64,000 nt of DNA, taken from contig NC_043010.1 in NCBI RefSeq assembly GCF_006345805.1, positions 48,794,001 through 48,858,000 of the forward strand, given 5' to 3'. This document shows positions 4,035 through 56,329 of the stretch, in pieces. The DNA is from Octopus sinensis (lineage: Eukaryota). How positions within the stretch are numbered: the first letter of the stretch is position 1; every line of letters begins with the position of its first letter. The notes beneath the pieces are model-generated. The model saw nothing but the letters and a program-made list of their open reading frames with translations. It did not search any database and was not told where the DNA came from. Position numbers and translations under genes: made by a program.

Positions 4035-4129
4035 GTGTGGAAAACGTAAAGGAATAAGGGTTTAAAACCCGGGCAGGTACCTTATCAACATTGATACAAT
4101 TCAGATACGGCTAACCACATCAAACGATA

Positions 4130-4186
4130 GGGACCGGTTGTCAAGCGATGTTGGTGGGGAGGACAAACACAGACACACAAACATAT

Positions 4187-4219
<33 letters not shown>

Positions 4220-4220
4220 A

Positions 4221-4251
<31 letters not shown>

Positions 4252-4253
4252 CC

Positions 4254-4285
<32 letters not shown>

Positions 4286-4440
4286 TACGACGGGCTTCTT
4301 TCAGTTTCCGTCTACCAAATCCACTCAGAAGCCCGAGGCTATAGTAGAAGACACTTGCCCAAGGTGCCACGCAGTGGGGCTGAACCCGGAACCATGCGGT
4401 TCGTAAGTAAGCTACTTAACACACACCACCACTCCTACGC
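4130..4440 (-). mobile_element. SINE family A with expanded internal (CA)/(TA) tract
   Basis: Both halves match family A and flank the microsatellite at about 4170-4285. Confidence 0.8.
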
Positions 4441-4497
4441 CTGTATATATATATAAACATATATAAACACACACACACACACACACAACACACACAC

Positions 4498-4813: not shown

Positions 4814-4913
4814 NNNNNNNNNNNNNNNNNNNNNNNNNNNNNNNNNNNNNNNNNNNNNNNNNNNNNNNNNNNNNNNNNNNNNNNNNNNNNNNNNNNNNNN
4901 NNNNNNNNNNNNN
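4814..4913. other. Assembly gap (100 N)
   Basis: Run of exactly 100 n. Confidence 1.
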
Positions 4914-5004: not shown

Positions 5005-5236
5005 AAGGCGGCTAGCTGGCAGAAACGTTAGCACGCCGGGCGAAATGCGTAGCCGTATTTCGCGTGCCGTTACATTATGAGTTCAAATTCCGCCGAGGTA
5101 GACTTTGCCTTTCATCCTTTCGGGGTCGATAAATAAAGTACCAGTTACGCACTGGGGCCGATTTAATCGACTTCATCCGTTTGTCTGTCTTTGTTTGTCC
5201 CCTCTGTGTTTAGCCCCTTGTGGGTAGTAAAGAAAT
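5005..5236 (+). mobile_element. SINE family B (young Nin/Deu-core), monomer
   Basis: ctggcagaaacgttagc (A box), gagttcaaattcc (B box), gcctttcatcctttcggggtcgataaataaagtaccag core, tail ending aaagaaata. Confidence 0.9.
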
Positions 5237-5334
5237 ATATATGTATACAGATATACATGTATGTATATTATATATTGTATATGCAAATATATGTATGTAT
5301 ATATATATATCTATGTATATATATACACACACAC

Positions 5335-6085: not shown

Positions 6086-7099
6086 AAATTTCAATGACAT
6101 TTTTTAAGATGAAGAAAGCTATGGCATGGGTCATGGACACCGTTGCTTTGGAGAAATTCCGTGGAGTTTTCACGAAGTTAGAGAATCCTATTTCGAAGGA
6201 GATCAAAGATTTTTACGTCTCTGAAATTACTGGAATTTCAGAGGTGTAAAATCTTTGATCTCCTTCTAAGTAGAATCTTCTTACTGCAATTCATTTGTAT
6301 TCCTCCAGGCACTTCATGAAGACCCCACGGAATTCCCCCAAAGCGACGGTGTCCAAAACTTGTCACACATTCCATCTTAAAAAAATGCTCTGGAAGCGTT
6401 CCTTCAGCTAGGGAAACCAATAAAAATGGTAGGGACCAGTGTCAGGACTGTAAGAGGAGTGATGGACAATTTTGATGCCCAGCTCTGTCAAGTTGTTTTC
6501 ACCAGAATGCTCGTCTTGGAACACCATGGGAAGAAACTTTGCATAAATTTTGCGCATATTCAGATCTTCATGAATAAATCTGTGTGCAGTTGTCACACCA
6601 ACTCCAAACGGTATCTTATTGTCTTTATAGATAAATGACGGTCTTCGCTCAGAAGAATGCGAATTTTCTCAACCAGTTCTGATGTTCTAACGTCCCTCTC
6701 TTTCCAATACCTCTCATCGTCTCTGACATCCTCTCTACCGTTCTTGAACCTCTTGCGCTAGCTAAAAAGTTAATCCGTAAGCTGTTTGAGGCATTTCATA
6801 AGTTTCAGAGACGACGGGAGATATGGGAAGGAGGAGGCATGTCAGAACATCAGAACTGGTTGAAAAAATTTTTCATTCTTCTCGATGATGACCATCATGT
6901 GTCTATAAAGGCAACAAGCATTACGTTTGGAGTTTGTGTAACAACTGCACACAGAATTCTGCATAAAGGTCTGAATATGCAGAAAATTTGTGCAAAGTGT
7001 GTTTCCAGAGTGTTCAGTGACGAGCATGCTGGTAAAAAAGAAGACACTACTTGACAGAGAAGGGCTTCAAAACTGTCCACCACTCTTCTAACAGTCCAG
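6086..7099. mobile_element. Mariner transposase remnants in alternating orientation
   Basis: Translations include TTAHR.IH.DLNMRKI.AKF, HHSSYSPD (HPPYSPDL-like) and LDTVALGEFRGVFMKCLEEYK*IAVRRFYLEGD (C-terminal YFEG-like). Confidence 0.75.
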
Positions 7100-9449: not shown

Positions 9450-11190
9450 TCTCTCCTCAATAAAAGAAATGTAAACCAGGCCATCCCCAAATAAATTAAG
9501 ACAGACACGAAACGCCAATATTCCCAGGTTAAGCGAAATAATATATGCTGTAGCTATGCTAATTACAAAGAAGCGTGAACGCTGCCTCAGATCTACTTTG
9601 AAACTCAGACGAATGACATGGAAAACAATTATACCGAAAAGTAATGAAAATAAAAGATAAAAGCCTTCAGTACTTACCAAATGAAATCAACATCCAAAAG
9701 ATACAACTGAAAAGATAAGGAGAAATGTATAGGAATATAGTGTTAGCGAAAAGAGTGTGTAAAACTGACGTGGATTTAAAAAAAGAGAAACTTGCTAAAT
9801 CGTGGTAAAAAAAAAAAACAGTATGAAAAGCGACGATTATCTAACAAAATGAGTATTCTTATTTCTTTACTGCCCCCAAGGGGCTACACACAGAGGGGAC
9901 AAACAAGGACAGACAAACGGATTAACTCGATTATATCGACCCCAGTGCGTAACTGGTACTTATTTAATCGACCCCGAAAGAATGAAAGTTAAAGTCGATC
10001 TCGGCGGAATTTGAACTCAGAACGTGACAGCAGACGAAATACCTATTTCTTTACTACCCACAAGGGGCTAAACACAGAGGGGACAAACAAGGACAGACAT
10101 AGGTATTAAGTCGATCACATCGACCCCAGTGCGAAAGAATGAAAGGTAAAGTCGATCTCGGCGGAATTTGAACTCAGAACGTGACAGCAGACGAAATACC
10201 TATTTCTTTATTACCCACAAGGGGCTAAACACAGAGGGGACAAACAAGGACAGACATAGGTATTAAGTCGATCACATCGACCCCAGTGCGAAAGAATGAA
10301 AGGTAAAGTCGATCTCGGCGGAATTTGAACTCAGAACGTGACAGCAGACGAAATACCTATTTCTTTATTACCCACAAGGGGCTAAACACAGAGGGGACAA
10401 ACAAGGACAGACATAGGTATTAAGTCGATCACATCGACCCCAGTGCGAAAGAATGAAAGGTAAAGTCGATCTCGGCGGAATTTGAACTCAGAACGTAACA
10501 GCAGACGAAATACCGCTAAGCATTTCGCCCAGCGTGCTAACGATTCTGCCAGCTCGCCGATGCCACGGAGGATAAATAGAGGCAATGCAAGAAAAGCTCA
10601 TGTGGTAGTGAACATGGTAGCAAAGATCAGTTGCTGTTCAACTAAGCTATAACCGAAGAATGGTTTAAACTTAGAGTGGATAGACTACCTGAAAGTGTTT
10701 TGTATCCTGCAAACATTAGAATAAATGAACAATAACAAGCAGATATCTTAAACATGTAACGAATAAATGGCAAACAATTTTGTAGCAGACGAGGACAAGA
10801 GGAAGGAATTATAAAATTTCACTTCACCTCTACTCCAGGGAGACGCCTTCTCTCTTGGCGATTGTTCAGTCATAGAAAGTTTCTTTCCTACGAATGCAGG
10901 GATGTAGGGTCTTAAGCAAGTAGAAAATTATTAAAGAATAATCACTTTTGATGTAGAAAACATACCTGAAGTACTGTGAAAAACTAACAAAAATAACTAC
11001 CGAATAGGGACAAAACAAAAATTGTTTTCTGTGTTCAAGGAAGCCAATAAGTACAAAACAAATGCTGAAGAGACATACGGTTATGAAGGGAAGAGGAAGC
11101 AACAGATATTGTGAAAAAGCTAGAAACGAGTCTACATGTTTTGCTGAAATGACGCCATTTATATAACCAATACGAGAAAAACTGAACGGG
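9450..11190 (+). mobile_element. Dong/R4-clade LINE RT remnant, interrupted by a SINE-B array
   Basis: Fragments IIYAVAMLIT, GSKDQLLFN*AI, WIDYLKVF, LLQGDAFS and INH resemble the R4/Dong motifs GTKDQLLINKAI, WIDYKKAFD, IFQGDSLSP. Confidence 0.6.
9858..10560 (-). repeat. Head-to-tail array of SINE family B (one ~183-bp unit plus three 157-bp units)
   Basis: gacgaaatacc recurs at 10033, 10190, 10347 and 10504 (period 157); the three units share a ~27-bp internal deletion. Confidence 0.92.
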
Positions 11191-11200
11191 AACAGAAATA

Positions 11201-12087
11201 CGAGAGAGTAGCCAAAGGTAACCGGAAACATTCGCTGTGAGACAAACCAGTTGTAGTACAGGCTTCTGCCGCTAGAATCCACTTATGCGGCATCAGTTTA
11301 CCGACTGGCAACGTTCGGTAAAGTCGTACTGCCACACGGTGCATCTTTGTATTGCAGTGCTTCTCCCCTGTGCCTCTATTTTTGCGATAGCTAAAACGAA
11401 GGAACAGCGAGCTTCCGTGAAAGTCTGTTTTCTGCAGGGGAAAATGGCGGCCGAAACAGTTATCATGCTTCAAACAGCTTACAAGGACGCAGCATGAGCA
11501 AAACGCAAGTTAACGAGTGGTCTCCATGTTTTAGAAATGGTCACTTGTCGCTTGAAGACCATCCTCGACCAGGACGACCGTCGACCTTCCGAACGAATGA
11601 AAACATCATGAAAATTCATGAAGTGACCCGTCACTGAGCAATTGACGAATTTGTTGATATGATTGGTGTGTCCTGGAGCTCCTGCCAATGATTTTTGAGC
11701 GAGGAATTGTGAATGAAAAGAGTTTGCAGCAAAATTTGTGTCTCGTTTGCTCACGGATGAACAAAAGCAGTCACGAGTGAATGCGCGTTGTGAACTGAAA
11801 GAACAGTGGGAAGTTGATCCGGATCTTTTTTCGAAGGGCATCACTGGTAATGAAAGCTGGTACTACGAAATGTGCAGATGTGGAAGAGGTGAAGAAAAAA
11901 ACGATGAAGGCGTTAAAAGGCATCACTCCGTCAGAGTTCCAGCACTGTTTCGAATAATGGAAAACGCGTCTAGACTGATGCATTGCTTGAAATGGAGAAT
12001 ACTTTGAAGGCGATAAAAGTGTAAACATGTAAAACTAAGTGAATAAAATAATACTGCAAAACTCCGGTTTCTTTTGGGAACCCCTCG
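11201..12087 (+). mobile_element. Internally deleted, non-autonomous mariner
   Basis: Imperfect TIRs cgagagagtagccaaaggtaaccgg / ccggtttcttttgggaacccctcg with TA on both sides; transposase fragments KEQRASVKVCF, RPGRPS, SRLLTDEQK, ITGNESW (GDETW-like), NGEYFEGD; the catalytic middle is missing. Confidence 0.88.
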
Positions 12088-16500: not shown

Positions 16501-17111
16501 GGATTCTCAACAGCTGCAAACAGCTTTCGTCTTTGAACCAGCGCTCCTATAATCTCGAACCGTACTAAACAAGATGAAGTTTTCAGTTATTGAGAAAAGT
16601 TAGTTTTCCTTGTGGCTATTATATACGAATCAAGAAGTTTTATATCATTCACTGAGCTTCTCTTGTTCTAGGCCATGATCATTCATACTACAGAACTTTC
16701 AGGCTAGGACCATACAAAGAAAGCAGGGTATTAACTTAAAGCAAAATGACTTCAGATTTGGAAATGAACTAGTTTATAACTGACGTCTTCCTGGCACCTA
16801 AACGTTTTCTACATCTCTGGAGAACAGGTTTACCACTTTAAAGATGACTGTGGAAAACTGAGAGAAGGCTTGCCTCGTGAAGCCGGCGATCTGGCAGAAA
16901 CGTTAGCACGCCGGGCGAAATTCCGCCGAGGTCGACAGTTTTTCATTTGAGCCATCATACATTACTGCGTGGCATTTTTTCTTCCTTTTTTTTTTTAGTT
17001 TGGGAGGAGGGAGTTTGGGAGTTCTTGTCTGCTTGTACATTTTTCTGTGTCAGAGGGGGATGGGCAGGTTTGGTGCCTGTAGGGGGAGGGTGGATCGAAT
17101 GCCGCTAAAGA

Positions 17112-17532
17112 TTCTTATTTCGTTACTGCCCACAATGGGTCACACACAGAGGGGACAAACAAGGACAGACAAGAGGATTAAGTCGATTATATCGACCCCA
17201 GTGCGTAACTGTTACTTATTTAATCGACCCCGAAAGGATGAAAGGTAAAGTCGACCTTGGCGGAATTTGAACTCAGAACGTAAAGACAGACGAAATACCT
17301 ATTTCTTTACTACCCACAAGGGGTTAAACACAGAGGGGACAAACAAGGACAGACACACGGATTAAGTCGATTATATCGACCCCAGTGCGTAACTGTTACT
17401 TATTTAATCGACCCCGAAAGGATAAAAGGCAAAGTCGACCTCAGCGGAATTTGAACTCAGAACGTAAAGACAGAGGAAATACCGCAAAGAGCATTTCGTC
17501 CGACGTGCTAACGTTTCTGCCAGCTCGCCGCC
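17112..17532 (-). mobile_element. SINE family B dimer
   Basis: Two bodies joined at aaagaaata|ggtatttcgtc (17299/17300). Confidence 0.9.
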
Positions 17533-19260: not shown

Positions 19261-19639
19261 CGCCAGATTATTATTAATATTATTATTCATTCTACGGAAA
19301 CTATGCAGTCCTGAATAGGACACTCGGATTTACCAAGTGAGAAAAATTACGGGAGTTCAACAGCTTTTTGCTAACTGAGTAACTCGGGTATCACCAAGAT
19401 ACGCTGTTGTTAGCCAGCATGCAAAACCGATTGAAGAGAAAACACGGAAACCGCCAGTGTTACATATCTCTTTGAAATCATTTTTGGATATATCTCTTTC
19501 TTTCTCTTTTTTTGTTCTCTCTCTCTTTTCTCTTTTACTTGTTTCAGTCATTTGACTGCGGAATTTGAACTTAGAAGGTAAAGACCGACGAAATATCACT
19601 AAGCATTTTGTCAGGTGTGCTGACCATTCGACCAAATAT

Positions 19640-19880
19640 TCGTTTCTGCCATAGGCACAAGGCCTGAAGTTTTGTGGGAAGGGGTTAGTCAAGTGCTCGA
19701 CTACCCAGTGCTCGACTGGTACTCAAGTACTCAAGTGCTCGACTGGTACTCATTTTATCGACTTCGAAAGGATGAAAGGCAAAGTCGACCTCGGCAGAAT
19801 TTGAACTCAGAAAATAAAGACGGACGAAATTCTGCTAAGCATCTTTCCTGGCGTGCTAACCATTCTGCCAGCTCGCCGCT
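19640..19880 (-). mobile_element. Older Nin-core SINE (ggccttgtgccta tail type)
   Basis: Same head and core as family B, different 3' tail; similar to 33735-33945 and 60470-60680. Confidence 0.75.
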
Positions 19881-20560
19881 TTCGTCGCCTTAACTATTAA
19901 GAAGTAATGATTTCAGATTTTGACTCAAAGTCAGTAACTTCTGGGTAGGGGTGATAGTCGGTTTCATCGATCCCAGTGTTTAACTGGTACTTATTTTATC
20001 GCTCCCACCACACTCCGAAGGATGAAAGGCCAAGTCAACTTTGGCAGACTCTGAACTCTGAAATCAGAACGTAAAATGCTGCTCAGCATTTTGTGAGTCT
20101 TTATATGTTGTTGTCAAATGGGAATCTCACGTATTGTGCAAAGACGACGCCAACAGCAACAAGACCTTTTGTTTAATATACGGGATTGTGGCTTCAGCTA
20201 CTTTTAGCAGTTCTGCATTTTGTTCTTAATCTGGCTATACTCATCTAAATCTGAAAATTTCTAAAGGCTACAACGGAATATATTTGTAACAAACTGATCG
20301 AAAAGCATTTAGACAACTCCAAAAGAAATTTTCTACAGGATTAAACGACCTTACAACATTAGCAACCAAATTTCACTCAAATAACACCCTGCCTTCTCTT
20401 TAAATGAAAGAGTCATTAGATTACGTAGCCTTCAATAATCTAGAGAATATGTCGGAATAAAACAGCGATTTGTGAACTGGCAGAATCGTTAGCAAGCTGG
20501 ACAAAATGCTTAGCAGTATATCTTCTGGCTTAACGTTTTGAGTTCAGTTTCTGCTGAGGT

Positions 20561-23990: not shown

Positions 23991-24574
23991 AGCCACTCCT
24001 ATGTTATATACTTATTTATTTATTTACTTGCTGAGACGGCAAGCTGGCGGCATCGTTATTGTACCAGATAAAATACTTCGTGGTATTTCGCTCAGCTCTC
24101 TACGCTCTGAGCTCACATGCCGTCGACATCAACTCTGCCTTTTATTATTCCGGGCGTAAATAAAATAAGTACGAGCTGTGAACTATGTGCGATATAATCG
24201 ACTAGACTCCTCCTTTAAAATTTCAGGTCTTTTGCTTACAGTGGAAACGATTATTTATTTACTTATTAAAGCGGCAAGCTGGCCAAATCGTTACTGTGCT
24301 GGACAAAAACCTTAGCAGCATTTCGTCAGGCTCTTTATGTTCCGAGTTTAAATGCTGCCGAGGTCGACTTTGCCTTTTGAGCAAATCGGGGTCGATAAAA
24401 TAAGTACTAGTGGAGAACTATGGGCACTGTAATCTATTATCTCCCTTCCTCAAAATTTCAGGCGTTGTGCCTGCCTATAGTAAAAAGAATGATTTATTTA
24501 TCTGTATTGGACTCAGTCAAATATAGTAAATACGCCATTAACTGCGATGTTTATTTACTGAAAGGCGATAAGTG

Positions 24575-25010
24575 TAGGTGTGTGGTAAGAAGCTTGCTTC
24601 CCAAACAAATGGTTCGGAGTTCAGTCCCACTGCGTGGCACTTTGGGCAAGTGTCTCCTACTATAGCCCCTGGCCGACCAAACCCTTGTGAATGGATTTGA
24701 AAACTGAAAGAAGCCCATCGTATATATATATGTCTGTGTGCGCGCGCGTGTGTGCGTGTGTGTGTGTGTGTGTGTTGTGTGTGTGTGTGTCTTTGTGTCT
24801 GTGTTTGTGCCTCCACCACTACCGCTTGACAACCGATGTTGGTGCATTTACGTCCCCGTAACCTAGCGGTTCGGCCATAGAGACCGATAGAATAAGTACC
24901 AGGCTTTGAAAATAAAAATAAGTGCTGGTGGGGGTTGATACATTCGACTAAAAATCCTTCAAGGCGGTGCCCCAGCATGGCTGCAGTCTAATGACTGAAA
25001 GAAGTAAAAG
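24575..25010 (+). mobile_element. SINE family A
   Basis: Full length with an internal (TA)(TG)n tract. Confidence 0.85.
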
Positions 25011-30965: not shown

Positions 30966-31074
30966 TGGTCACAGCTAGAAAGACCAATGTAAGACCGTGT
31001 TGGAACGACTAAGTTGAAAGCCAGTAAAAAAATTTCAAATTTTGGGACAGCGTCAGTAATTTCGGAGCTAAGTT

Positions 31075-31425
31075 GATTAAGTCGACCCCAGTGCTCAACT
31101 GGTACCTATTTTATCGATCCCGTAAGGATGAAAGGCAAAGTCGATCGCGGTTTAATTCTAACCTAGAACATGAAATCGGACGAAATACCTATTTCTTTAC
31201 TGTCCACAAGGGGCTACACACAGTGGGGACAAACAAGGACAGACAAACGGATTAACGCGATTATGTCGACCCCAGTGCGTAACTGGTACTTATTTAATCT
31301 ACCCCCGAAAGGATGAAAGGCAAAGTTGACCTCGGCGGAATTTGAACTCAGAACGTAGCGGCAGACGAAATACCACAAAGCTTTTTGCTCGACGCGGTAA
31401 CGATTCTGCCGGCTCGCCGCCGTTA
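31075..31425 (-). mobile_element. Young SINE-B body nested in an older Nin-core SINE
   Basis: gacgaaatacc duplicated at 31179-31189 and 31364-31374; diverged head and diverged distal body flank a young body. Confidence 0.8.
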
Positions 31426-31829: not shown

Positions 31830-33289
31830 CGAGAAAGAGAGAGACAGTGTGTATGTGTGTGAGTGTGTGTGAGTGATGTGAGTGTTTGTGTGTGAGAGAG
31901 AGAGAAACAATGTGTGTGAGTGTGTGTGTGTGTGTGTGTGCGTGGGTGTGTGAGTGGGTGTGTGTGAGAGAGAGAGTGTGTGGGGGGGGGGTGCGCGTGC
32001 GTGCGTGCACTATTTAAATGGATGTGGGATGGGAAAAAGTCGATGTATTCTGATATATATTGGTTACTTTCCTTTATGCCCGATTGACTTTGTCGATTGT
32101 CTTCCTTCGAGATCGATAATGACAGAAATCAATCATTAAATAGTATCTAATGTTATACACGTATCTATGTATCTGGTGTATCCCGTACAGTCTTACAAGC
32201 ACTTATCTAATTACTTTAATGCCTATTAGGGGTTATTTGAGCTCCAGTGAGTAAAATACGAGTTACGACATGTTATTACATAAAAGCTGCGCCCTCCACC
32301 TTTAGGATACGGTTTCCATAAATCCCAACCCCCCAGACCCATACTTACAGTGTCTTTAACAACTTTGTTTATTCGATCGATAGAATTGCAACGTTCCATA
32401 ACCTATTGGGTCACAGAGGCAGGGCTTTCTTAACAAAAGCGCACTGGCAGAATCGTTAGAACGCCGGGCAAAATGCCTAGCCGCACTTCGTCCGAATTCA
32501 TGTTCTGGGTTCAAATTCCACCGCCTCTGTTAAGACAGCCCTGCCTCTGTGACTCAATAGGTTATGGAACGTCGCAGTTCTATCGATCGAATGAACTTTG
32601 CCTTTCATCCTTTCGGGGTCGATAAAATAGGTACCAGTTGAGCACTGGGGTCGATGTAACCAACTTAGCTCCGAAGTTACTGACAGTGTCTCGAAATTTG
32701 ACATTTTTTTTTACTACCTTGAACATATTCGTTCCAACACTGTGTTTCATTGGTCTTTCTAGCTGTAACCATCCCGCTTTTTTTCCCCACATTGTGTATG
32801 TAGGACCATATTACCCAATACGCCCATTCAATTTTCGTGAGGTAGCTAGGAATTCATAACTGTCTAAACAGCGTTATAGGACCCCCTGGGACAAACAGTG
32901 CACCGGACCACTGCATATATAGATCAGAATTGGGTCCCTAAACCCGTGCTCCTCCGTCAGCTACTGCCCTGTATGCTCATCCCTTAAGATGGCTCTGCAG
33001 GGAGGCACCATTAGACTTCCTGTTTATATAGTATATCTAGAACAAATTAATAAAACATAGTTACATAAACAGTGTAACTTTTGGGTACCCCCTCGTGTAT
33101 ACGCGTAGGAGCAGGAAATTACATTTCAGAGATAAGCCACCTTTGAAAAGCTACGTGTAGATTCGACTAGAACACGTTTGCTTAACTAAGTATTGACTAA
33201 GTATTAAATAACAACTAGCTACGAATTCGATCGACAAGCGTCTTTAATGGTTTCATGTTTTGGCACAAGGCCAGCAATAAATAAGGAGA

Positions 33290-33720
33290 GGCAGTGAATA
33301 AGTCGATTACTTGACCCCTGTACTTGGCTGGTACGCTATCTTACCAATGCGGAAGGATGAAAGGCAAAATTGACTTCAGTGTGATTTGAATTCAGAAGGT
33401 AGGTGCATCGGAAAAAATACCTATTTCTTTATTACCCACAAGGGGCTAAACACAGAGGAGACAAACAAGGACAAACAAGGACAGACAAACGGATTAAGTC
33501 GATTACATCGACCCCAGTGCGTAACTGGTACTTAATTTATCGACCCCGAAAGGATGAAAGGCAAAGTCGACCTTGGCGGATTTTAACTCAGAACGTAACG
33601 GCAGACGAAATACAGCTACGCATTTCGCCCAGGGTGCTAACGCTTCTGCCAGCTCGCCGGAAGAAATACCGTTAAGCATATTGCTCGATGCAGTAACGAT
33701 TCGACTAGCTCGCCGCTTTA
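33290..33720 (-). mobile_element. Full young SINE-B (33422-33658) nested in an older Nin-core SINE
   Basis: 12-bp TSD ggaaaaaatacc (33410-33421) / ggaagaaatacc (33659-33670); old head at 33671-33720, old body at 33290-33409. Confidence 0.88.
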
Positions 33721-33734
33721 AGCGTCTTCAATAA

Positions 33735-33945
33735 TTCTTTCTACTATAGGCACAAGGCTGGAAATTTTGCAGGGGTGATGGAAGCTAGTCGATTACATAG
33801 ACCCAGTACATAGCTGGTACTTATTTTATCGACTCTTAAAGGTTGAATGGCAACGTCAACCTCGGCGAGATTTGAACTCAGAACGTAAAGACGGACGAAA
33901 TACCGCTTATCATTTTGTCCTACATGCAAACGATTCGACCCGTTC
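33735..33945 (-). mobile_element. Older Nin-core SINE
   Basis: Head, core and ccttgtgcctatagtag tail. Confidence 0.75.
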
Positions 33946-34372
33946 ACCTCCAGCATCTTTAATTATACAGCGAAAGCATCGGTTAGAAGATGCGAACTGA
34001 CGACCAGGTGTTTGGTTGTCTTATTACTCTATGCAGTTGGCTAATCGTAACTGTCACTACATAGGTTAATAGTGACAAATTCTATTTAACACAATGAAAT
34101 CTAAGGATTTGCTCGTTATCAATATTTTACAGGAAGTTCATCTGAATGTCAGTGATTTCCTTTTATCATTTACCACTTCTCTCTCTTTTTCTCTCTTTCT
34201 TTCATTTTCTAAATCATTTCTTTTTTAAATCGGTTTTCTTCTTGAAGACGTCATTTTCATCATTTCCTTTCTTCCTTCCTTCACTTCTACTTTCACTTTC
34301 TCTTTCAAACCTAATTTTTTTTCTTCTCTCGTGTTCCTTTTCTACTCTCCCAACCTCTTTCCCTTTCTTTCT

Positions 34373-44502: not shown

Positions 44503-44670
44503 CATATATACGACGGGCTTCTTTTCAGTTTCCGTCTACCAAATCCACTCACAAGGCTTTGGTCGGCCCGAGGGTATAGTAGAAGACACTTGCCCAAGGT
44601 GCCACGCAGTGGGACTGAACCCAGAACCATGTGGTTGGTAAACAAGCTACTTACCACACAGCCACTCCTG
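44230..44670 (-). mobile_element. SINE family A, young and full length
   Basis: gcaggagtggctgtgtggtaagtagc head through the gactgaaacaagtaaaagagtaaaagag tail. Confidence 0.88.
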
Positions 44671-44889
44671 CATATATATACGACGGGTTTCTTTCAGTTT
44701 TGGCACAGGGCCAGCAACTTCGAGGGAGGGGCTAAGTCGATTATATCGACTCCAATGCCCGATTGGTACTTATTTTATCGACCCTGGAAGTCGACCTCGG
44801 CAATGAAGAAGGACGAAATACCTATTTCTTTACTACCCACAAGGGGCTAAACACAGAGAGGACAAACAAGGACAGACAAACGGACAGAA

Positions 44890-47924: not shown

Positions 47925-48148
47925 CTGCTGGCAGAAACGTTAGCACGCCGTGCGAAATGCTCAGCAGTATTTCGTCTGTCGTTACGTTCTGAGTTCAAAT
48001 TCCGCCAACGTCGACTTAGCCTTTCATCCTTTCGGGGTCAATTAAATAAGTACCAGTTACGCATTGGGGTCCATATAATCGACTTAATCCCTTTGTCTGT
48101 CCTTGTTTGTCCTCTCTGTGTTTAGCCCCTTGTGGGCAGTAAAGAAAT
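47925..48148 (+). mobile_element. SINE family B monomer
   Basis: Full body; short TSD tatgtta. Confidence 0.88.
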
Positions 48149-48509
48149 ATATGTTATACTTTGTATGAAACTAAATAATTGATATGATACACCGATAGTA
48201 TGAATGTATGTTTGTTTGTTTTTTTCTCTAGGTACACGTTTGTACCTACACAAACACACACACACACACACATGTTAACATACTGATAGCCTGTGAGTGT
48301 CAGTAAATTTGTGAACGAATACATGTACATACATAGAGACACTAGAAATGAACATGATATTTGGGACTAAAAACTATGCAAGACTTTAAAATTTAGAGGA
48401 CGATTGAACAAAACAAGATGCCTTCCTTCACAACCTTGCTACCAAGTAGGTGGCCGATCAAAATTTACTCTACATTAAAAAGAGAAAGAGAAGAACATAT
48501 ATATGCACA

Positions 48510-48915: not shown

Positions 48916-49128
48916 TGATTTCAAATTTTAGCACAAGGCCAGAATTTGGCGGTGGGGGGAAAAGTTGATTACATCGACACCAGTACTTTACTGGTACTTA
49001 ATTTATCGACACTGAGAAGGATGAAATGCAAAGTCGACCTCGGCGAAATTTGAACTCATTACGTAAAGACGAACGAAATGCCGCTAAGCACTTTGTCCGG
49101 CATGCGAACGATTCTGCCAGCTTACCAC
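48916..49128 (-). mobile_element. Nin-core SINE inserted into the tail of the preceding SINE
   Basis: 15-bp TSD ggtagaaagaattat at 48901-48915 and 49129-49143. Confidence 0.85.
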
Positions 49129-49204
49129 GGTAGAAAGAATTATCGTTCATTACAATCCGGCGAACTGCCTGAGTTGTTAAGACATTGGACAATATACTTC
49201 GAAG

Positions 49205-50640
49205 CAAGACGGCGAGCTGGTAGAAACATTAGCACGCCGGGCGAAATGCGTAGCCGTATTTCGTCTGCCGCTACGTTCTGAGTTCAAATTCCGCCGAGGT
49301 TGACTTTGCCTTACATCCTTTCGAAGTCGATAAATTAAGTACCAGTTACGCACTGGGGTCGATGTAATCGACTTAATCCGTTTGTCTGTCCTTGTTTGTT
49401 TCCTCTGTGTTTAGTTCCTTGTGGGTAGTAAAGAAATAGGTATTTCATCTGCCGCTACGTTCTGAGTTCAAATTCCTGCGAGGTCGACTTTGCCTTTCAC
49501 CCTTTTGGGGTCGATTAAATAAGTACCAGTTACGCACTGGGGTCGTTATAATCGACTTAATCAGTTTATCTGTCCTTGTTTGTCTCCTCTATGTTTAGCC
49601 GCTTGTGGGCAATAAAGAAATAGGAATCGTTAGCACACCGAGCAAAAATGCTGTATGGCATTTCGTCCGTTTTTATGAGTTCAAATTCCACCAAGGTCAA
49701 CTCTTCTTTTCATTTCTCGGAGGCCGATAAAACAAAGTACCAGTCATGTACTGTTCGGTAGTATCCACTAATCCTCAGCCTTCAAAATTGCTGGCCTTGA
49801 GTATAAATCAAAAACAATTATTCCATATGTGAGAAGTGTGACGAGCTGGCGGAATCGTTAGCACGCCGGACGAAATGCTTAGCGGTATTTCGTCTGCCGT
49901 TACGTTCTGAGTTCAAATTCCTGCGAGGTCGACTTTGCATTTCGGCGTCGATAAATTAAGTACCAGTTACGCACTGGGATCGATGTAATCGACTTAATAC
50001 CTTATCTGTCCTTGTTTGTCTCCTCTATGTTTAGCCGCTTGTGGGCAATAAAGAAATAGGAATCGTTAGCACACCGAGCAAAAATGCTGTATGGCATTTC
50101 GTCCGTTTTTATGAGTTCAAATTCCACCAAGGTCAACTCTTCTTTTCATTTCTCGGAGGCCGATAAAACAAAGTACCAGTCATGTACTTGTTCGGTAGTA
50201 TCCACTAATCCTCAGCCTTCAAAATTGCTGGCCTTGAGTATAAATCAAAAACAATTATTCCATATGTGAGAAGTGTGACGAGCTGGCGGAATCGTTAGCA
50301 CGCCGGACGAAATGCTTAGCGGTATTTCGTCTGCCGTTACGTTCTGAGTTCAAATTCCGCCGAGGTCGACTTTGCCTTTCATCCTTTCGGGGTCGATAAA
50401 TTAAGTACCAGTTACGCACTGGGATCGATGTAATCGACTTAATACCTTTATCTGTCCTTGTTTGTCTCCTCTATGTTTAGCCGCTTGTGGGCAATAAAGA
50501 AATAGGAATCGTTAGCACACCGAGCAAAAATGCTGTATGGCATTTCGTCCGTTTTTATGAGTTCAAATTCCACCGATGTTCACTTTGCTGTTTTTCTTTT
50601 AGAGTCGATGAATTAAGTACCAGCGCCAAAATTTGAAATC
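49205..50640 (+). repeat. Higher-order SINE array: a B dimer then a ~440-bp unit (old SINE + young SINE) repeated
   Basis: ggaatcgttagcacaccgagc at 49623, 50059 and 50505. Confidence 0.88.
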
Positions 50641-53202: not shown

Positions 53203-53241
53203 ATATATTATATATATATATATATATATATACATATTACC

Positions 53242-53468
53242 TATTTCTTTACTACCACAAGGAACTAAACACAGAGGGAGAAAACAAGACATACAAACGG
53301 ATTAAGTCGATTACATCGACCCCAGTGCATAACTGGTACTTAATTTATCGACCTCGAAAGGATGAAAGACAAAGTCGACATCGGCGGAATTTGAACTCAG
53401 AACGTAACGGCAGACGAAATACCGCTAAGCATTTCGCCCGGCGTGCTAACGTTTCTGCCAGCTCGCCA
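53242..53468 (-). mobile_element. SINE family B monomer
   Basis: Full body; 6-bp TSD ggtaat (element sense). Confidence 0.88.
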
Positions 53469-53818
53469 TTACCGCGGTTTCCCTACTTGCCCTCCTGTTA
53501 CCATTTCCTCTGCAGATGCTAATAACCCATGTGCTGCTATCATCATAACAAGCGCCGCAATATGTCACCAAGATTGAATGTACGATCGTGTACTTGTGAC
53601 TGCTTGTCTTCTTTTACGTATTAAATTCATTAATTATTCTTGACGAAAAGTAACAAGTGGATGAGACGAAAGTGAAACCAAGTTTATATACATATACATA
53701 TATATGCACACGCGCGCATATATATATACACACATATGCACACACATGCACACACATACATATATACAATCTATGCATATACATATATATATATATGCAT
53801 ATATATATAACATATGTA

Positions 53819-55370: not shown

Positions 55371-56061
55371 GTGTAGTAAGATTAGGATTTTGCTGAACGG
55401 ACATTAGTGGTATCAGTGATTATGTAACATTTTAGCCAGTACGTAGGATTTAGCCGCTTTGTACGGTGACAGATTAGCGTCCAGTTTTTTTAAATGCAAC
55501 GTGTCTTCGACTACAGCAAACACACGCACATAAAATGGCCACCCTAAGCAGTCCGGTCACCTCGCAAACCTCACGTCATTCCACTACCGGACATGTTGTA
55601 TTTCTTCTACTGTCCTTCCTCTTCCGATATATCTACCGTTATTATTGTTGTTGATGTTGCTGATAATGAGTCTGCAGGCTAAGCTTGGCCAGTAGACCTC
55701 TGATCCAAGATACGCTACCCATGACCATCCCGTCTTTTGCCTATATGTAGGGGAAAACCAGTAGCATATTATCCAACGTGATCAATTCTAAGACTATAGA
55801 AGCGATATGAGGGAATTTGGCTTCTATTACCAACAAACTCAATGACCACATAAAGACTGCCTCGTTGGCTTGGCCGAGATATTTGTAAGCTCTGTTTCTT
55901 ATTACATAAGAAAGAGAAAAAAAAAGACGGATACAGCCTAAGCGTGACAAGTACTGTTTAGCACTTATTTCACGTGATGCACATCACATCATCTTGATGT
56001 TACCGCTATATTTGTAAGGAGAAGAGCGGTACACTGCATTACAATACTCTAACTCCTAAAG

Positions 56062-56329
56062 GCGGCGAGCTGGCAGAAACGTTAGCACGCCGGGTGAAAT
56101 GCTTAGCGGTATTTCGTCTGCCCCTTGTGGGTAGTAAAGAAATAGGTATTTCGTCTGTCTTTACGTTCTGAGTTCAAATTCCGCCGAGGTCGACGTTGCC
56201 TTTCATCGTTTCGGGGTCGATTAAATAAGTACCAGTTACGCACTGGGGTCAATCTAATCGACTTAATCCGTTAGTCTGTCCTTCTTCGTCCCCTCTGTGT
56301 TTAGCCCCTTGTGAGTACTAAAGAAATAG
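56062..56329 (+). mobile_element. SINE family B containing a 24-nt 3'-end insertion of its own family
   Basis: ggtatttcgtctg at 56108-56120 and 56145-56157 flanks ccccttgtgggtagtaaagaaata. Confidence 0.88.

What the first reader, a model, noticed from the sequence alone, without database searches (positions are those of the whole stretch)
33290..33720. Self-targeting SINE: young Nin-core copies insert at one site (GGTATTTC) in the head of their own family
Seen: the young family-B tail ends ..aaagaaata and is followed by ggtattt(c/t) at 10043, 10200, 10357, 17299, 31189, 33421, 44822, 49438 and 56144. That is about seven loci and about half of all such 3' junctions in this window. At 33410-33670 a full young copy sits between the head and body of a diverged old copy, with a 12-bp TSD (ggtatt(t/c)ttcc, element sense) that follows the old copy's sequence and not the young consensus, so the duplication is target-derived. 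Established: TPRT produces TSDs, and some non-LTR elements are sequence-specific. Inference: the partner LINE machinery or the SINE RNA prefers this site, giving a SINE that homes into its own relatives. The RNA 3' end (AAGAAAUA) is the reverse complement of the target top strand (TATTTCTT), which suggests RNA-assisted targeting. The other junctions (agaatc, agaata, ggaatc, ggtaat) fit a looser RGWAT preference.
Basis: partly seen in the sequence, partly recalled or inferred. Interest (0 to 1): 0.8.

Follow-up and report, generated by a model that had tools for sequence, protein, structure and literature searches.

The report
Octopus SINE inserting into SINE heads
A young octopus SINE (short interspersed element) has repeatedly inserted at two fixed positions inside the tRNA-like head of older SINE copies, building nested and tandem copies, which is an unusual but only partial target preference whose cause is still unknown.

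Summary
The 16-mer AAAGAAATA|GGTATTT occurs 9 times in the window (0.02 expected) and marks 9 of the 18 young-SINE 3' ends, which come from 7 of about 14 independent events. At 33410-33670 a full-length young copy sits in an old copy between 12-bp duplications that carry the old copy's own sequence.

These are mostly DNA-level nested retrotranspositions, not co-transposed chimeras. Four results support this:
- a second clean target-site duplication (TSD) at 56108-56156;
- a composite whose head is far more diverged than its body;
- an intact orthologous host SINE in O. sinensis where O. bimaculoides carries the insert.

Most nested copies lack their own head. I infer that the SINE-derived target overhang anneals to the homologous part of the cDNA. 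Arrays of 157 bp x3 and about 437 bp x3 are secondary duplications.

In about 190 kb of other octopus DNA only 2 of 10 junctions lie in heads, so "half" applies to this dense window. GGT-type motifs are also hit outside SINEs. The RNA/top-strand pairing idea does not fit priming geometry and is unsupported. Target class tracks a tail variant (post hoc, p about 0.01).

The parts
33422..33658 (-). Full-length young SINE copy (237 bp; carries a 10-bp internal duplication relative to the 228-bp consensus) nested in an old SINE
   Evidence: Starts ggcgagctgg and ends gggtaataaagaaata.
33659..33670 (-). 5' copy of the target-site duplication (ggtatttcttcc)
   Evidence: The sequence follows the old host, not the young consensus.
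33410..33421 (-). 3' copy of the target-site duplication (ggtattttttcc); its T run lies 5 nt after the young tail
33671..33721 (-). Head (positions 1-44) and leader (ttaaagc) of the old host SINE, separated from its body by the insertion
33240..33409 (-). Body and tail of the old host SINE (different tail family: ...ctggccttgtgccaaaacatgaaaccattaaagac)
9860..10558 (-). Chain: head 10515-10558, three 157-bp body-tail units that share a 27-bp deletion (10358-10514, 10201-10357, 10044-10200), and an undeleted unit 9860-10043. There are three tail|GGTATTT junctions.
   Evidence: The units are 0.7-1.4% apart, which indicates secondary tandem amplification.
17116..17529 (-). Chain: head + unit (17300-17529), tail|GGTATTT, second unit (17116-17299). 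The second unit's tail abuts agaatctttagc, position 12 of an old head remnant.
31069..31418 (-). Old-type head (31375-31418), then a young body-tail down to 31190 (the 12 nt at 31363-31374 are the 5' copy of the GGTATTTCGTCT site), then the old host body from GGTATTTCGTCC (31189 downwards)
   Evidence: The head is 22.7% diverged from the young consensus against 6.9% for the body (p = 0.004).
44686..44888 (-). 66-nt young tail fragment (44823-44888) abutting an old SINE body that starts at GGTATTTCGTCC (44822 downwards). No host head lies upstream.
   Evidence: Unresolved event.
49159..49622 (+). Diverged old head ending exactly at position 44 (49159-49205) + aagac + full young copy (49211-49438) + tail|GGTATTT + second young unit (49439-49622)
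   Evidence: No TSD is visible. Unresolved.
49623..50623 (+). Second hot spot: young tails (ending 49622, 50058, 50504) abut GGAATCGTTAGCAC, position 12 of an old SINE. The same rare GGAATCG variant precedes the young part at 49851-49864 and 50288-50301. The composite plus 19 bp of flank is repeated about 3 times, about 437 bp apart.
56064..56328 (+). Host young SINE carrying a 25-nt tail fragment (56120-56144) between 12-bp duplications ggtatttcgtct (56108-56119 and 56145-56156). The host itself is flanked by a 17-bp TSD gctatatttgtaaggag.
53236..53473 (-). Solo full-length young copy in unique DNA with TSD GGTAAT (comparison case)
47927..48149 (+). Solo young copy in unique DNA, TSD TATGTTA (comparison case)
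5010..5237 (+). Solo full-length young copy in TA-rich DNA (comparison case)

Best explanation
A young subfamily of a tRNA-derived octopus SINE with a Nin-DC/Deu-type core has been inserted into genomic DNA with a marked target-site bias. The consensus is 228 bp, the tail ends ...CCCCTTGTGGGTAGTAAAGAAATA, and the consensus contains no T4 run. I infer target-primed reverse transcription by an unidentified partner LINE. Two of the preferred sites lie in the conserved head of resident SINEs of the same superfamily: 44|45 (..GCTTAGC|GGTATTTCGTC, at the 3' shoulder of the anticodon-like hairpin) and 11|12 (..CTGGC|RGAAYCGTTAGC, inside the A box). Similar motifs are also used in unique DNA (GGTAAT, GGTTGTCTG, GGTATTTATAG; AGAATA, AGAAATA, AGAAAC). 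SINE heads hold nearly all copies of the longer motif: 19 of the 20 GGTATTTC in the window lie in the SINE context. A sequence preference therefore turns into apparent homing. The staggered second nick gives TSDs of 6-17 bp, 12 bp at the head site. When host and incoming copy are alike, the 12-nt top-strand overhang is itself SINE sequence. It can anneal to the matching part of the new cDNA, so second-strand synthesis starts there. The result is host head + new body-tail + host body-tail with no second head. When the host is too diverged (33422), or annealing occurs elsewhere (56144), an ordinary full-length or truncated insert with visible TSDs results. The direct repeats made in this way are later amplified by unequal exchange (157 bp x3; about 437 bp x3). 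Shown by sequence: the junctions, the TSDs, the hybrid head, the orthologous intact host and the motif occupancy. Inferred: the enzyme, the annealing step and the later exchange. The cause of the bias is open. It could be endonuclease specificity or pairing of the nicked target with the 3' end of the SINE RNA.
For: Recurrence: (9 of 18 tails). Clean host-derived 12-bp TSDs at 33410-33421/33659-33670 and at 56108-56119/56145-56156. At the second site the locus-specific variant GGAATCGTTAGCAC lies on both sides of the young part. Composite 31190-31418 has a head 22.7% diverged from the young consensus against 6.9% for its body (Fisher p = 0.004); six other full-length copies tested the same way differ with p > 0.2, and 53242 shows a weak opposite trend (head 0% vs body 8.1%, p = 0.08), so none has a head more diverged than its body. 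No copy starting at position 45 lies next to unique DNA, and every such unit follows a tail. Cross-species check: the old SINE hit at 11|12 in O. bimaculoides (L025:21979) is present, complete with leader and positions 1-11, at the orthologous place in O. sinensis (L024, about 34100-34330). Motif dependence: 7 of 12 SINE GGTATTT sites are occupied against 0 of 10 non-SINE sites and 0 of 12 heads with a variant site. Use of GGT-type and AGAA-type motifs in unique DNA with TSDs: 53242, L026/L027, L028/L029, comp3761. Hosts belong to at least three tail families. Array units differ by only 0.7-1.4%.
Against: Only 2 of the 7 events at 44|45 show host head + TSD on both sides. Two events (44823 in the window; L025:21979) have a short tail fragment joined to unrelated upstream DNA with no host 5' part. 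Explaining these needs target deletion or filler DNA, or a different mechanism. 49438 has an upstream head that ends exactly at position 44 but has no TSD and is much older than the unit downstream. The O. vulgaris-specific event at L020:24000-24259 is a scrambled three-piece insert with a 790-bp deletion. In two of three young-young chains the neighbouring units are each other's closest relatives in the window: 7.0% and 8.3% apart against a median of 11.3%. Local duplication or gene conversion therefore contributes. The partner LINE was not found, and the whole sample is 24 events.
Confidence: 0.7

Rival explanations
1. RNA-level chimeras. During one retrotransposition event the reverse transcriptase reaches position 45 of one SINE RNA (a cleaved 5' end in the anticodon-like loop, or a stall) and jumps to the 3' end of a second SINE RNA. 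Tail|GGTATTT junctions are then made before integration, not by insertion into a resident copy.
For: Position 44|45 lies at the loop/stem junction of a predicted 13-bp hairpin in the head, a plausible RNA cleavage point. Events 44823 and L025:21979 lack the host's 5' part. The O. vulgaris-specific insert at L020 is built of three SINE pieces, and two of their ends fall exactly at 44|45.
Against: The host-derived TSDs at 33422, 56144 and the site-12 composites cannot be made this way. The host of L025:21979 pre-exists intact in O. sinensis. No solo copies start at position 45, although they should be the commonest product of a cleaved RNA. Old host parts are much more decayed than the young parts joined to them. 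No known ribozyme or RNA family matches the element.
Confidence: 0.1
2. Dimeric or tandem source. The junction arose once or a few times and was spread by retrotransposition of dimeric masters (read-through transcripts) or by local tandem duplication, without any insertion preference.
For: The young consensus has no T4 terminator, so Pol III transcripts would run into whatever follows. Three junctions at 10043-10357 and three at 49622-50504 are plainly local duplications. Units 17116 and 17300 share a private variant (taacag) and are unusually close.
Against: Downstream partners belong to different families: three old hosts with three different tails, and young hosts of different subfamilies. 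The upstream partners range from 25 nt to full length. Internal TSDs are present at 33422 and 56144. Corresponding units of different dimers are not closer to each other than to random copies. The same junction type occurs at unrelated loci in two other species.
Confidence: 0.08
3. RNA-determined target choice. This comes in two forms. In the reader's version the RNA tail AAGAAAUA pairs with the top strand TATTTCTT and guides the nick. In a more canonical variant, read-through transcripts from source copies that sit at GGTATTTT(T) sites end in ...AAAUAGGUAUUUU, and this end anneals to the nicked bottom strand ...AAATACC-3' of other GGTATTT sites. AGAA-type targets would pair with the tail itself.
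For: Target class tracks a tail variant. In the tally tested, copies with gtgggTa lie at GGT... targets 9:1 and copies with gtgggCa at RGAA... targets 5:1 (Fisher p = 0.008, chosen post hoc). Adding L028:805 gives 10:1. The 33422 copy is followed by GGTATTTTTT, a T run at +5. AGAA-type targets resemble the tail's own AGAAATA. An RTE-related precedent exists, in which the first TSD nucleotides correlate with 3' microsatellite-like ends (PMC6007223 abstract).
Against: For the read-through version there is no direct evidence of such RNA ends. The association rests on 16-17 events and one nucleotide picked after inspection. Two partner LINE lineages with different endonucleases would give the same correlation.
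Confidence: 0.25

Closest known systems
Nested-insertion hot spots of Alu and L1 in human transposable elements (Levy, Schwartz and Ast 2010, PMC2836564; listed)
   Same: SINEs land inside other SINE copies at preferred internal positions, because the element sequence contains the motif favoured by the LINE machinery. Head-to-tail pairs result.
   Different: From my own knowledge, the Alu hot spots are A-rich linker and tail sequences that match the loose L1 TTTT/AA site. Here the sites are two specific G-containing motifs in the Pol III promoter head, not A/T-rich runs. At one of them insertion usually yields a precise head-less tandem unit.
Target-specific non-LTR retrotransposons in multicopy RNA genes, such as Utopia in U2 snRNA genes (PMC4640811), and R1/R2 in rDNA and the Tx1 group (own knowledge)
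   Same: Sequence-directed insertion at one nucleotide position of a repeated, Pol-transcribed sequence, in a fixed orientation. This can act as a safe haven.
   Different: Those lineages are near-exclusive for their site and are autonomous LINEs. Here only about one third to two thirds of events use the sites, unique DNA is also hit, the mobile unit is a SINE, and the target is the SINE family itself.
Insertion signature of RTE-related SINEs (Nishiyama and Ohshima 2018, PMC6007223)
   Same: The first nucleotides of the TSD correlate with the 3'-terminal sequence of the retroposon, which suggests that primer-template pairing shapes site choice. TSDs are of about 10-17 bp.
   Different: The RTE signature (a T at the TSD start about 10 nt downstream of a T stretch) is not seen at these sites. 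The partner LINE clade here is unknown.
Microhomology- or homology-mediated 5' junctions and chimeric L1 insertions (Gilbert et al. 2002; Symer et al. 2002; Zingler et al. 2005; recalled from my own knowledge, not read here)
   Same: The 5' end of a new insert is set where the target overhang or an upstream resident element can anneal to the cDNA. This gives precise 'truncations' and hybrids of resident and new elements.
   Different: Here the annealing partner is the TSD overhang itself, because the target is a copy of the same element. The outcome is therefore systematic rather than occasional. This step is inferred, not shown.
Octopus tRNA-derived SINEs OR1, OR2 and OK (Ohshima and Okada 1994, own knowledge). 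RepeatMasker labels 'OR2 SINE/tRNA-Core' and 'AmnSINE2 SINE/tRNA-Deu' appear on O. vulgaris transcripts (supplement of PMC9115989).
   Same: Same kind of element in the same genus: a tRNA-like head, a conserved core and a non-poly(A) tail.
   Different: I could not compare sequences with the reference consensuses. No report of head-directed insertion turned up in the literature searches.

Membership tests
tRNA-derived SINE with conserved core (Nin-DC / Deu type) | Internal Pol III promoter: an A box near position 8-19 and a B box downstream | tested here: met
   The consensus reads TGGCAGAAACG at 8-18 and GAGTTCAAATTCC at about 70-82. This is a match by eye to the TRGCNNAGTGG and GGTTCGANNCC consensus sequences, which I recalled from my own knowledge.
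tRNA-derived SINE with conserved core (Nin-DC / Deu type) | Head recognisable as a tRNA | tested here: not met
   ARAGORN finds no tRNA in the window. Rfam gives no hit at gathering score. The head is tRNA-like only through its boxes and a long anticodon-like hairpin.
tRNA-derived SINE with conserved core (Nin-DC / Deu type) | Core domain homologous to the published Nin-DC/Deu consensus | not testable with these tools
   No reference consensus was available. The core (..gactttgcctttcatcctttcggggtcgataaa.taagtaccag..) is shared by all families in the window. Similar octopus repeats are labelled tRNA-Core or tRNA-Deu by RepeatMasker in PMC9115989.
tRNA-derived SINE with conserved core (Nin-DC / Deu type) | Dispersed copies flanked by target-site duplications | tested here: met
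   TSDs of 6-17 bp at 53242, 47927, 56064-56328 and 33422, at L026/L027 and at L028/L029.
tRNA-derived SINE with conserved core (Nin-DC / Deu type) | 3' tail shared with a partner LINE | tested here: inconclusive
   No LINE carrying this tail was found in the 64-kb window or in about 190 kb of other loci. The sequence upstream of the 66-nt fragment at 44823 has no Pfam hit and no repeat copies.
Target-specific (site-specific) non-LTR retrotransposon system | Near-exclusive insertion at one defined sequence | tested here: not met
   8 of 24 events are at 44|45, 3 of 24 at 11|12 and 13 of 24 elsewhere.
Target-specific (site-specific) non-LTR retrotransposon system | Same nucleotide position and fixed orientation at the target | tested here: met
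   All 8 events at 44|45 and all 3 at 11|12 are at the same phosphodiester bond and in the same orientation as the host.
Target-specific (site-specific) non-LTR retrotransposon system | Specificity conferred by the element-encoded endonuclease or DNA-binding domains | not testable with these tools
   The partner LINE was not identified.
Self-cleaving-ribozyme tandem repeats (retrozyme-like, Penelope-associated) | A hammerhead or other ribozyme motif in each unit that defines the unit ends | tested here: not met
   No Rfam ribozyme hit in the window at gathering score, and none at E up to 10 in the 9700-10700 array. I found no CUGANGA core when reading the consensus printed.

The most novel reading that the evidence does not exclude
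Target choice of this SINE is set by its RNA rather than by a fixed endonuclease motif. Subfamilies that differ in the tail, or in the flank-derived 3' end of their Pol III read-through transcripts, select different target motifs. The major subfamily thereby homes into the head of its own superfamily. It inactivates or hybridises with resident copies, seeds tandem arrays, and recreates at some sites the very flank (GGTATTTT..) that propagates the preference.
Probability: 0.25. Interest if true: 0.75.

Novelty: new variant of a known kind. Interest (0 to 1): 0.55.

Why it matters
If the bias holds genome-wide, it gives a SINE a built-in safe haven in other SINEs. It also offers a simple route from dispersed SINEs to hybrid subfamilies and to tandem repeats. 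Finally, it provides a natural system for asking whether the LINE endonuclease or the template RNA picks the target, in a genome where SINEs are a major component. Three chromosome-level Octopus assemblies exist, so the question can be tested directly by counting junctions and orthologous empty sites.

Tried and rejected
- **Scans of public DNA for the tail.** The viral contig scan gave 0 hits. The metagenome scan gave 18 hits, all chance 20-mers without the SINE. There was no route to a whole-genome census.
- **Protein search with the antisense SINE reading frame.** It returned one 543-bp ENA contig, which added one solo copy.
- **Exact look-up of the ORF spanning the 33422 insert.** Not on record.
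- **Sampling octopus DNA through proteins.** Exact proteins translated from the O. vulgaris transcriptome supplement of PMC9115989 (MCCC2, a THAP protein, an uncharacterised protein) were also found. Together they gave 11 loci in three species. COX11 was not an exact match.
- **Idea that the DNA upstream of the 66-nt fragment at 44823 is the partner LINE's 3' end.** There is no long ORF, no Pfam hit, no other copy in the window or other loci, and no similarity to the DNA upstream of the analogous L025 fragment. Rejected.
- **Idea that unit ends are set by a ribozyme or by tRNA processing.** There are no Rfam or ARAGORN hits and no solo units start at position 45. Rejected as the main cause.
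- **Idea that primer-tail microhomology explains GGTATTT.** The primer ...GAAATACC-3' is not complementary to ...AAAGAAAUA-3'. Rejected.
- **Pfam scan of ten window ORFs.** It found no gene that could anchor an orthologous comparison of the window itself.
Full report
**1. The observation**

The 16-mer AAAGAAATAGGTATTT occurs nine times in the 64-kb window, at exactly the coordinates given. Shuffles give 0.02 on average. I used the copy at 33422-33658 (minus strand) as a query and mapped 42 SINE segments. A search for the last 18 nt of the tail finds 18 tails. Nine of the 18 are followed by GGTATTT.

Some of these are local duplicates:
- The junctions at 10043, 10200 and 10357 belong to one array of 157-bp units. 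The units share a 27-bp deletion and differ by 0.7-1.4%.
- The tails at 49622, 50058 and 50504 belong to a tandem triplication of about 437 bp.

After collapsing these, about 14 independent 3'-junction events remain. Seven are at GGTATTT, position 45 of a 228-bp consensus that I built from 16 copies.

**2. The flagged locus**

In element sense (minus strand) the order is:
- old leader and head, 33721-33671;
- ggtatttcttcc, 33670-33659;
- a complete young copy, 33658-33422;
- ggtattttttcc, 33421-33410;
- old body and tail, 33409-33240.

Related old copies have a single ggtatttcgtcc followed by g(a/t)(t/c)tt. The 12-bp repeat was therefore made by the insertion. It carries the host's letters (cttcc), not the young copy's (cgtctgcc).

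**3.

The flanks 'agaatc' (17116) and 'ggaatc' (49622, 50058, 50504) are position 12 of SINE heads (..ctggc|RGAAYCGTTAGC, inside the A box). In the 49842 and 50279 composites the locus-specific variant GGAATCGTTAGCAC lies on both sides of the young part. The usual young sequence there is AGAAACGTTAGCAC. This is what a TSD of at least 12 bp looks like when the insert's 5' end is set at the homologous position. In total, 9 of the 14 window events are in SINE heads.

**4. Insertion into DNA, or chimeras made before integration?**

Five observations favour insertion into resident copies.
- **A second clean TSD.** At 56108-56156 a 25-nt tail fragment lies between two copies of ggtatttcgtct inside a young host. 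The host has its own 17-bp TSD.
- **The duplicated host variant at site 12** (section 3).
- **A hybrid composite.** The composite 31190-31418 has a head 22.7% diverged from the young consensus and a body 6.9% diverged (Fisher p = 0.004). Six other full-length copies tested the same way differ with p > 0.2. One (53242) shows a weak opposite trend, head 0% against body 8.1% (p = 0.08), so none has a head more diverged than its body. The 31190-31418 head carries old-family letters (cgagcaaaaagct). The arrangement is host head + new body-tail + host body.
- **No solo copies starting at position 45.** Every unit that starts at position 45 follows a tail. None abuts unique DNA. A cleaved or stalled RNA would give solo copies of this kind.
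- **An intact orthologous host.** In O. bimaculoides a 38-nt tail fragment abuts position 12 of an old SINE (L025:21979). The same old SINE, recognisable by its tail and downstream flank, is complete with leader and positions 1-11 in O. sinensis (L024, about 34100-34330).

**5. Why most nested copies have no head (inferred)**

After the second nick the top-strand overhang is the TSD, here GGTATTTCGTCT. This is also present in the incoming cDNA's template. Annealing at that place would prime second-strand synthesis from position 57 or so. The product would be head-body-tail-body-tail with the TSD hidden.

Three cases fit this:
- The diverged host at 33422 ends ...cttcc where the young copy has ...cgtct. 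It received a full-length copy with visible TSDs.
- The junction at 56119|56120 shows a gcc/cc microhomology.
- The direct repeats produced in this way then expand, as in the 157-bp and 437-bp arrays.

This extends to a special case the microhomology-mediated 5' joining and L1 chimeras that I recall from the literature. I did not read those papers here.

**6. Motif or 'self'?**

Counts in the window:
- GGTATTT occurs 29 times, 19 of them in the SINE context. GGTATTTC occurs 20 times, 19 of them in the SINE context.
- Seven of 12 SINE-borne GGTATTT sites are occupied, against 0 of 10 elsewhere (p = 0.005).
- 0 of 12 heads whose site is mutated (CGTATTT, GGCATTT and others) are occupied (p = 0.005).

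The exact motif therefore matters. GGTATTT alone is not sufficient within this window. Outside the window, however, GGT-type motifs in non-SINE DNA are used:
- GGTAAT with a TSD (53242);
- GGTTGTCTGTGGAAGAC with a 17-bp TSD (L028:805 and L029:1185);
- GGTATTTATAG in transcript comp3761.

AGAA-type motifs are also used: AGAATA (9860), AGAAATA (L023), and AGAAACTAT with a TSD of about 17 bp (L026/L027). The simplest reading is a sequence preference whose longest version is almost confined to SINE heads.

**7. How general is it?**

I obtained real octopus loci through exact protein look-ups: rhodopsin, MCCC2, a THAP protein and an uncharacterised protein, from O. vulgaris, O. sinensis and O. bimaculoides. 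These are 11 loci and about 190 kb once loci that are orthologous between O. vulgaris and O. sinensis are counted once. I added one ENA contig and two transcripts.

They add 10 independent junctions:
- one at 44|45 in a SINE (L020:24117);
- one at 11|12 in a SINE (L025:21979);
- eight elsewhere.

Only about 1 of 9 SINE-borne GGTATTT sites is occupied in these loci, against 7 of 12 in the window. Young tails are also about five times sparser there. The phenomenon therefore recurs at unrelated loci and in other species, but the window is an unusually dense patch. 'About half' should not be extrapolated. Over all 24 events, 8 are at 44|45, 3 are at 11|12 and 13 are elsewhere.

**8. What remains unexplained**

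- 44823 (window) and L025:21979 have short tail fragments joined to unrelated upstream DNA with no host 5' part.
- 49438 has an upstream old head that ends exactly at position 44, followed by aagac and no TSD.
- The O. vulgaris-specific event beside the rhodopsin gene replaces 790 bp that are present in O. bimaculoides. The replacement is three SINE pieces in the order [86-227][45-103][leader+1-44]. The last piece is joined to genomic GTCATTT, a near-match of the motif.
- These cases need target deletions, filler DNA or template switches. They keep a minority role open for RNA-level events.
- In two of three young-young chains the neighbouring units are unusually similar to each other. Local duplication or conversion therefore contributes.

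**9.

The tail's GAAATA is indeed the reverse complement of the target's TATTTC. In target-primed reverse transcription, however, the primer is the bottom strand, which ends ...GAAATACC-3'. This has the same sense as the RNA and cannot pair with it. Site 11|12 and most other targets have no such complementarity either.

The head folds into a 13-bp hairpin (28-40 with 45-57), and 44|45 lies at its 3' shoulder. The 'complementarity' is partly a restatement of that hairpin, because the tail end resembles the hairpin's 5' arm CGAAATGC.

Two further observations point to a possible role for the RNA:
- Copies whose tail reads gtgggTa sit at GGT... targets (9:1 in the tally tested; 10:1 once L028:805 is added). 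Copies with gtgggCa sit at RGAA... targets (5:1). Fisher p = 0.008, but the site was picked after inspection.
- The consensus has no T4 run, so Pol III should read into the flank. The 33422 copy is followed by GGTATTTTTT. Transcripts of a copy placed like this would end ...AAAUAGGUAUUUU, which is complementary to the primer at other GGTATTT sites.

This is a canonical pairing model that the present data neither prove nor exclude. Two partner LINE lineages would give the same correlation.

**10. Comparison with what is known, and verdict**

The elements are tRNA-derived SINEs with a conserved core. They have A and B boxes and TSDs, and RepeatMasker labels in PMC9115989 are of the tRNA-Core and tRNA-Deu type. 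ARAGORN and Rfam do not call the head a tRNA.

The behaviour resembles three known things:
- Alu-in-Alu hot spots (PMC2836564);
- more loosely, site-specific non-LTR elements in multicopy RNA genes (PMC4640811);
- the TSD/3'-end correlation of RTE-related SINEs (PMC6007223).

It fails the 'site-specific family' test, because 13 of 24 events are elsewhere. I found no report of a SINE that preferentially enters the head of its own superfamily.

I file it as a new variant of a known kind. The degree of preference is overstated by this window, and the cause of the preference is open.

Noticed in passing
window 19558-20062 (-), 24083-24434 (+), 33722-33936 (-): Old-family SINEs also lie head to tail. 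The tail of one copy (..gaaagaattatt..) is followed within a few bases by the leader ttaaagc + head of the next. At 19600 an old tail abuts a head that lacks about its first 7 nt. Older families may have had adjacency or head preferences of their own.
   Followed up: partly
window 48921-49126 (-): An inverted old SINE is inserted into the tail of another old SINE, with a 15-bp TSD GGTAGAAAGAATTAT.
   Followed up: partly
window 49440-50623: Tandem triplication (repeat distances 436 and 446 bp) of a whole composite (host SINE with nested young copy) plus 19 bp of flank (ccatatgtgagaagtgtga). The first unit is a mosaic of two young subfamilies, which suggests unequal exchange or conversion.
   Followed up: partly
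window 11360-12010 (+) and about 6380-6670: Decayed mariner-like transposon remnants: an HTH region (...MSKTQVNEWSPCFRNGHLSLEDHPRPGRP..., ...AKFVSRLLTDEQKQ...ITGNESW...) and a C-terminal piece (...PSEFQHCFE.WKTRLD.CIA.NGEYFEGD), with an internal deletion. The closest database proteins are 61-67% identical mariner transposases from unnamed JGI/ENA contigs, and none is from octopus.
   Followed up: partly
window 16885-16936 (+): A young-type head with an internal deletion that joins position 38 to about position 78 (gggcgaaat|tccgccgaggtcgac). It lies inverted next to the 17116-17529 chain.
   Followed up: no
window 56022-56063: 42 nt of unrelated sequence lie between the 5' copy of the 17-bp TSD (gctatatttgtaaggag) and the leader of the SINE at 56064. 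This could be 5' transduction from an upstream start, or a template switch.
   Followed up: no
window 44600-44680 (-) and many other places (for example 4100-4450 and 24540-24990): A second, unrelated tRNA-derived SINE family (..ggagtggctgtgtggtaagtagcttg..ggttctgggttcagtcccactgcgtggcacc..) is abundant. In transcript comp3761 its head lies just downstream of the non-SINE GGTATTTATAG target.
   Followed up: no
L020:24000-24259 versus L021:19960-20755: An O. vulgaris-specific event beside the rhodopsin gene. About 790 bp present in O. bimaculoides are replaced by three SINE pieces in the order [86-227][45-103][leader+1-44]. There are microhomologies at both ends: GAG on the left, and GTCATTT against GGTATTT on the right.
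   Followed up: partly
L025:21040-21941 versus L024:33755-34105: Upstream of the site-12 insertion in O. bimaculoides lie about 900 bp that are absent from O. sinensis and O. vulgaris. About 350 bp (including SINE positions 1-11) that are present in O. sinensis are missing. O. vulgaris has a third arrangement, so the spot has been rearranged repeatedly.
   Followed up: partly
L025 10001-19805 versus L023 and L024 10001-30529: The MCCC2 gene spans 9.8 kb in O. bimaculoides but 20.5 kb in O. vulgaris and O. sinensis, which implies large lineage-specific intron gain or loss.
   Followed up: no
window 4814-4913: An assembly gap of 100 N lies inside microsatellite-rich sequence. The window as a whole is very rich in (TA)n, (CA)n and (TATG)n-type repeats and has no recognisable protein-coding exon.
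   Followed up: no
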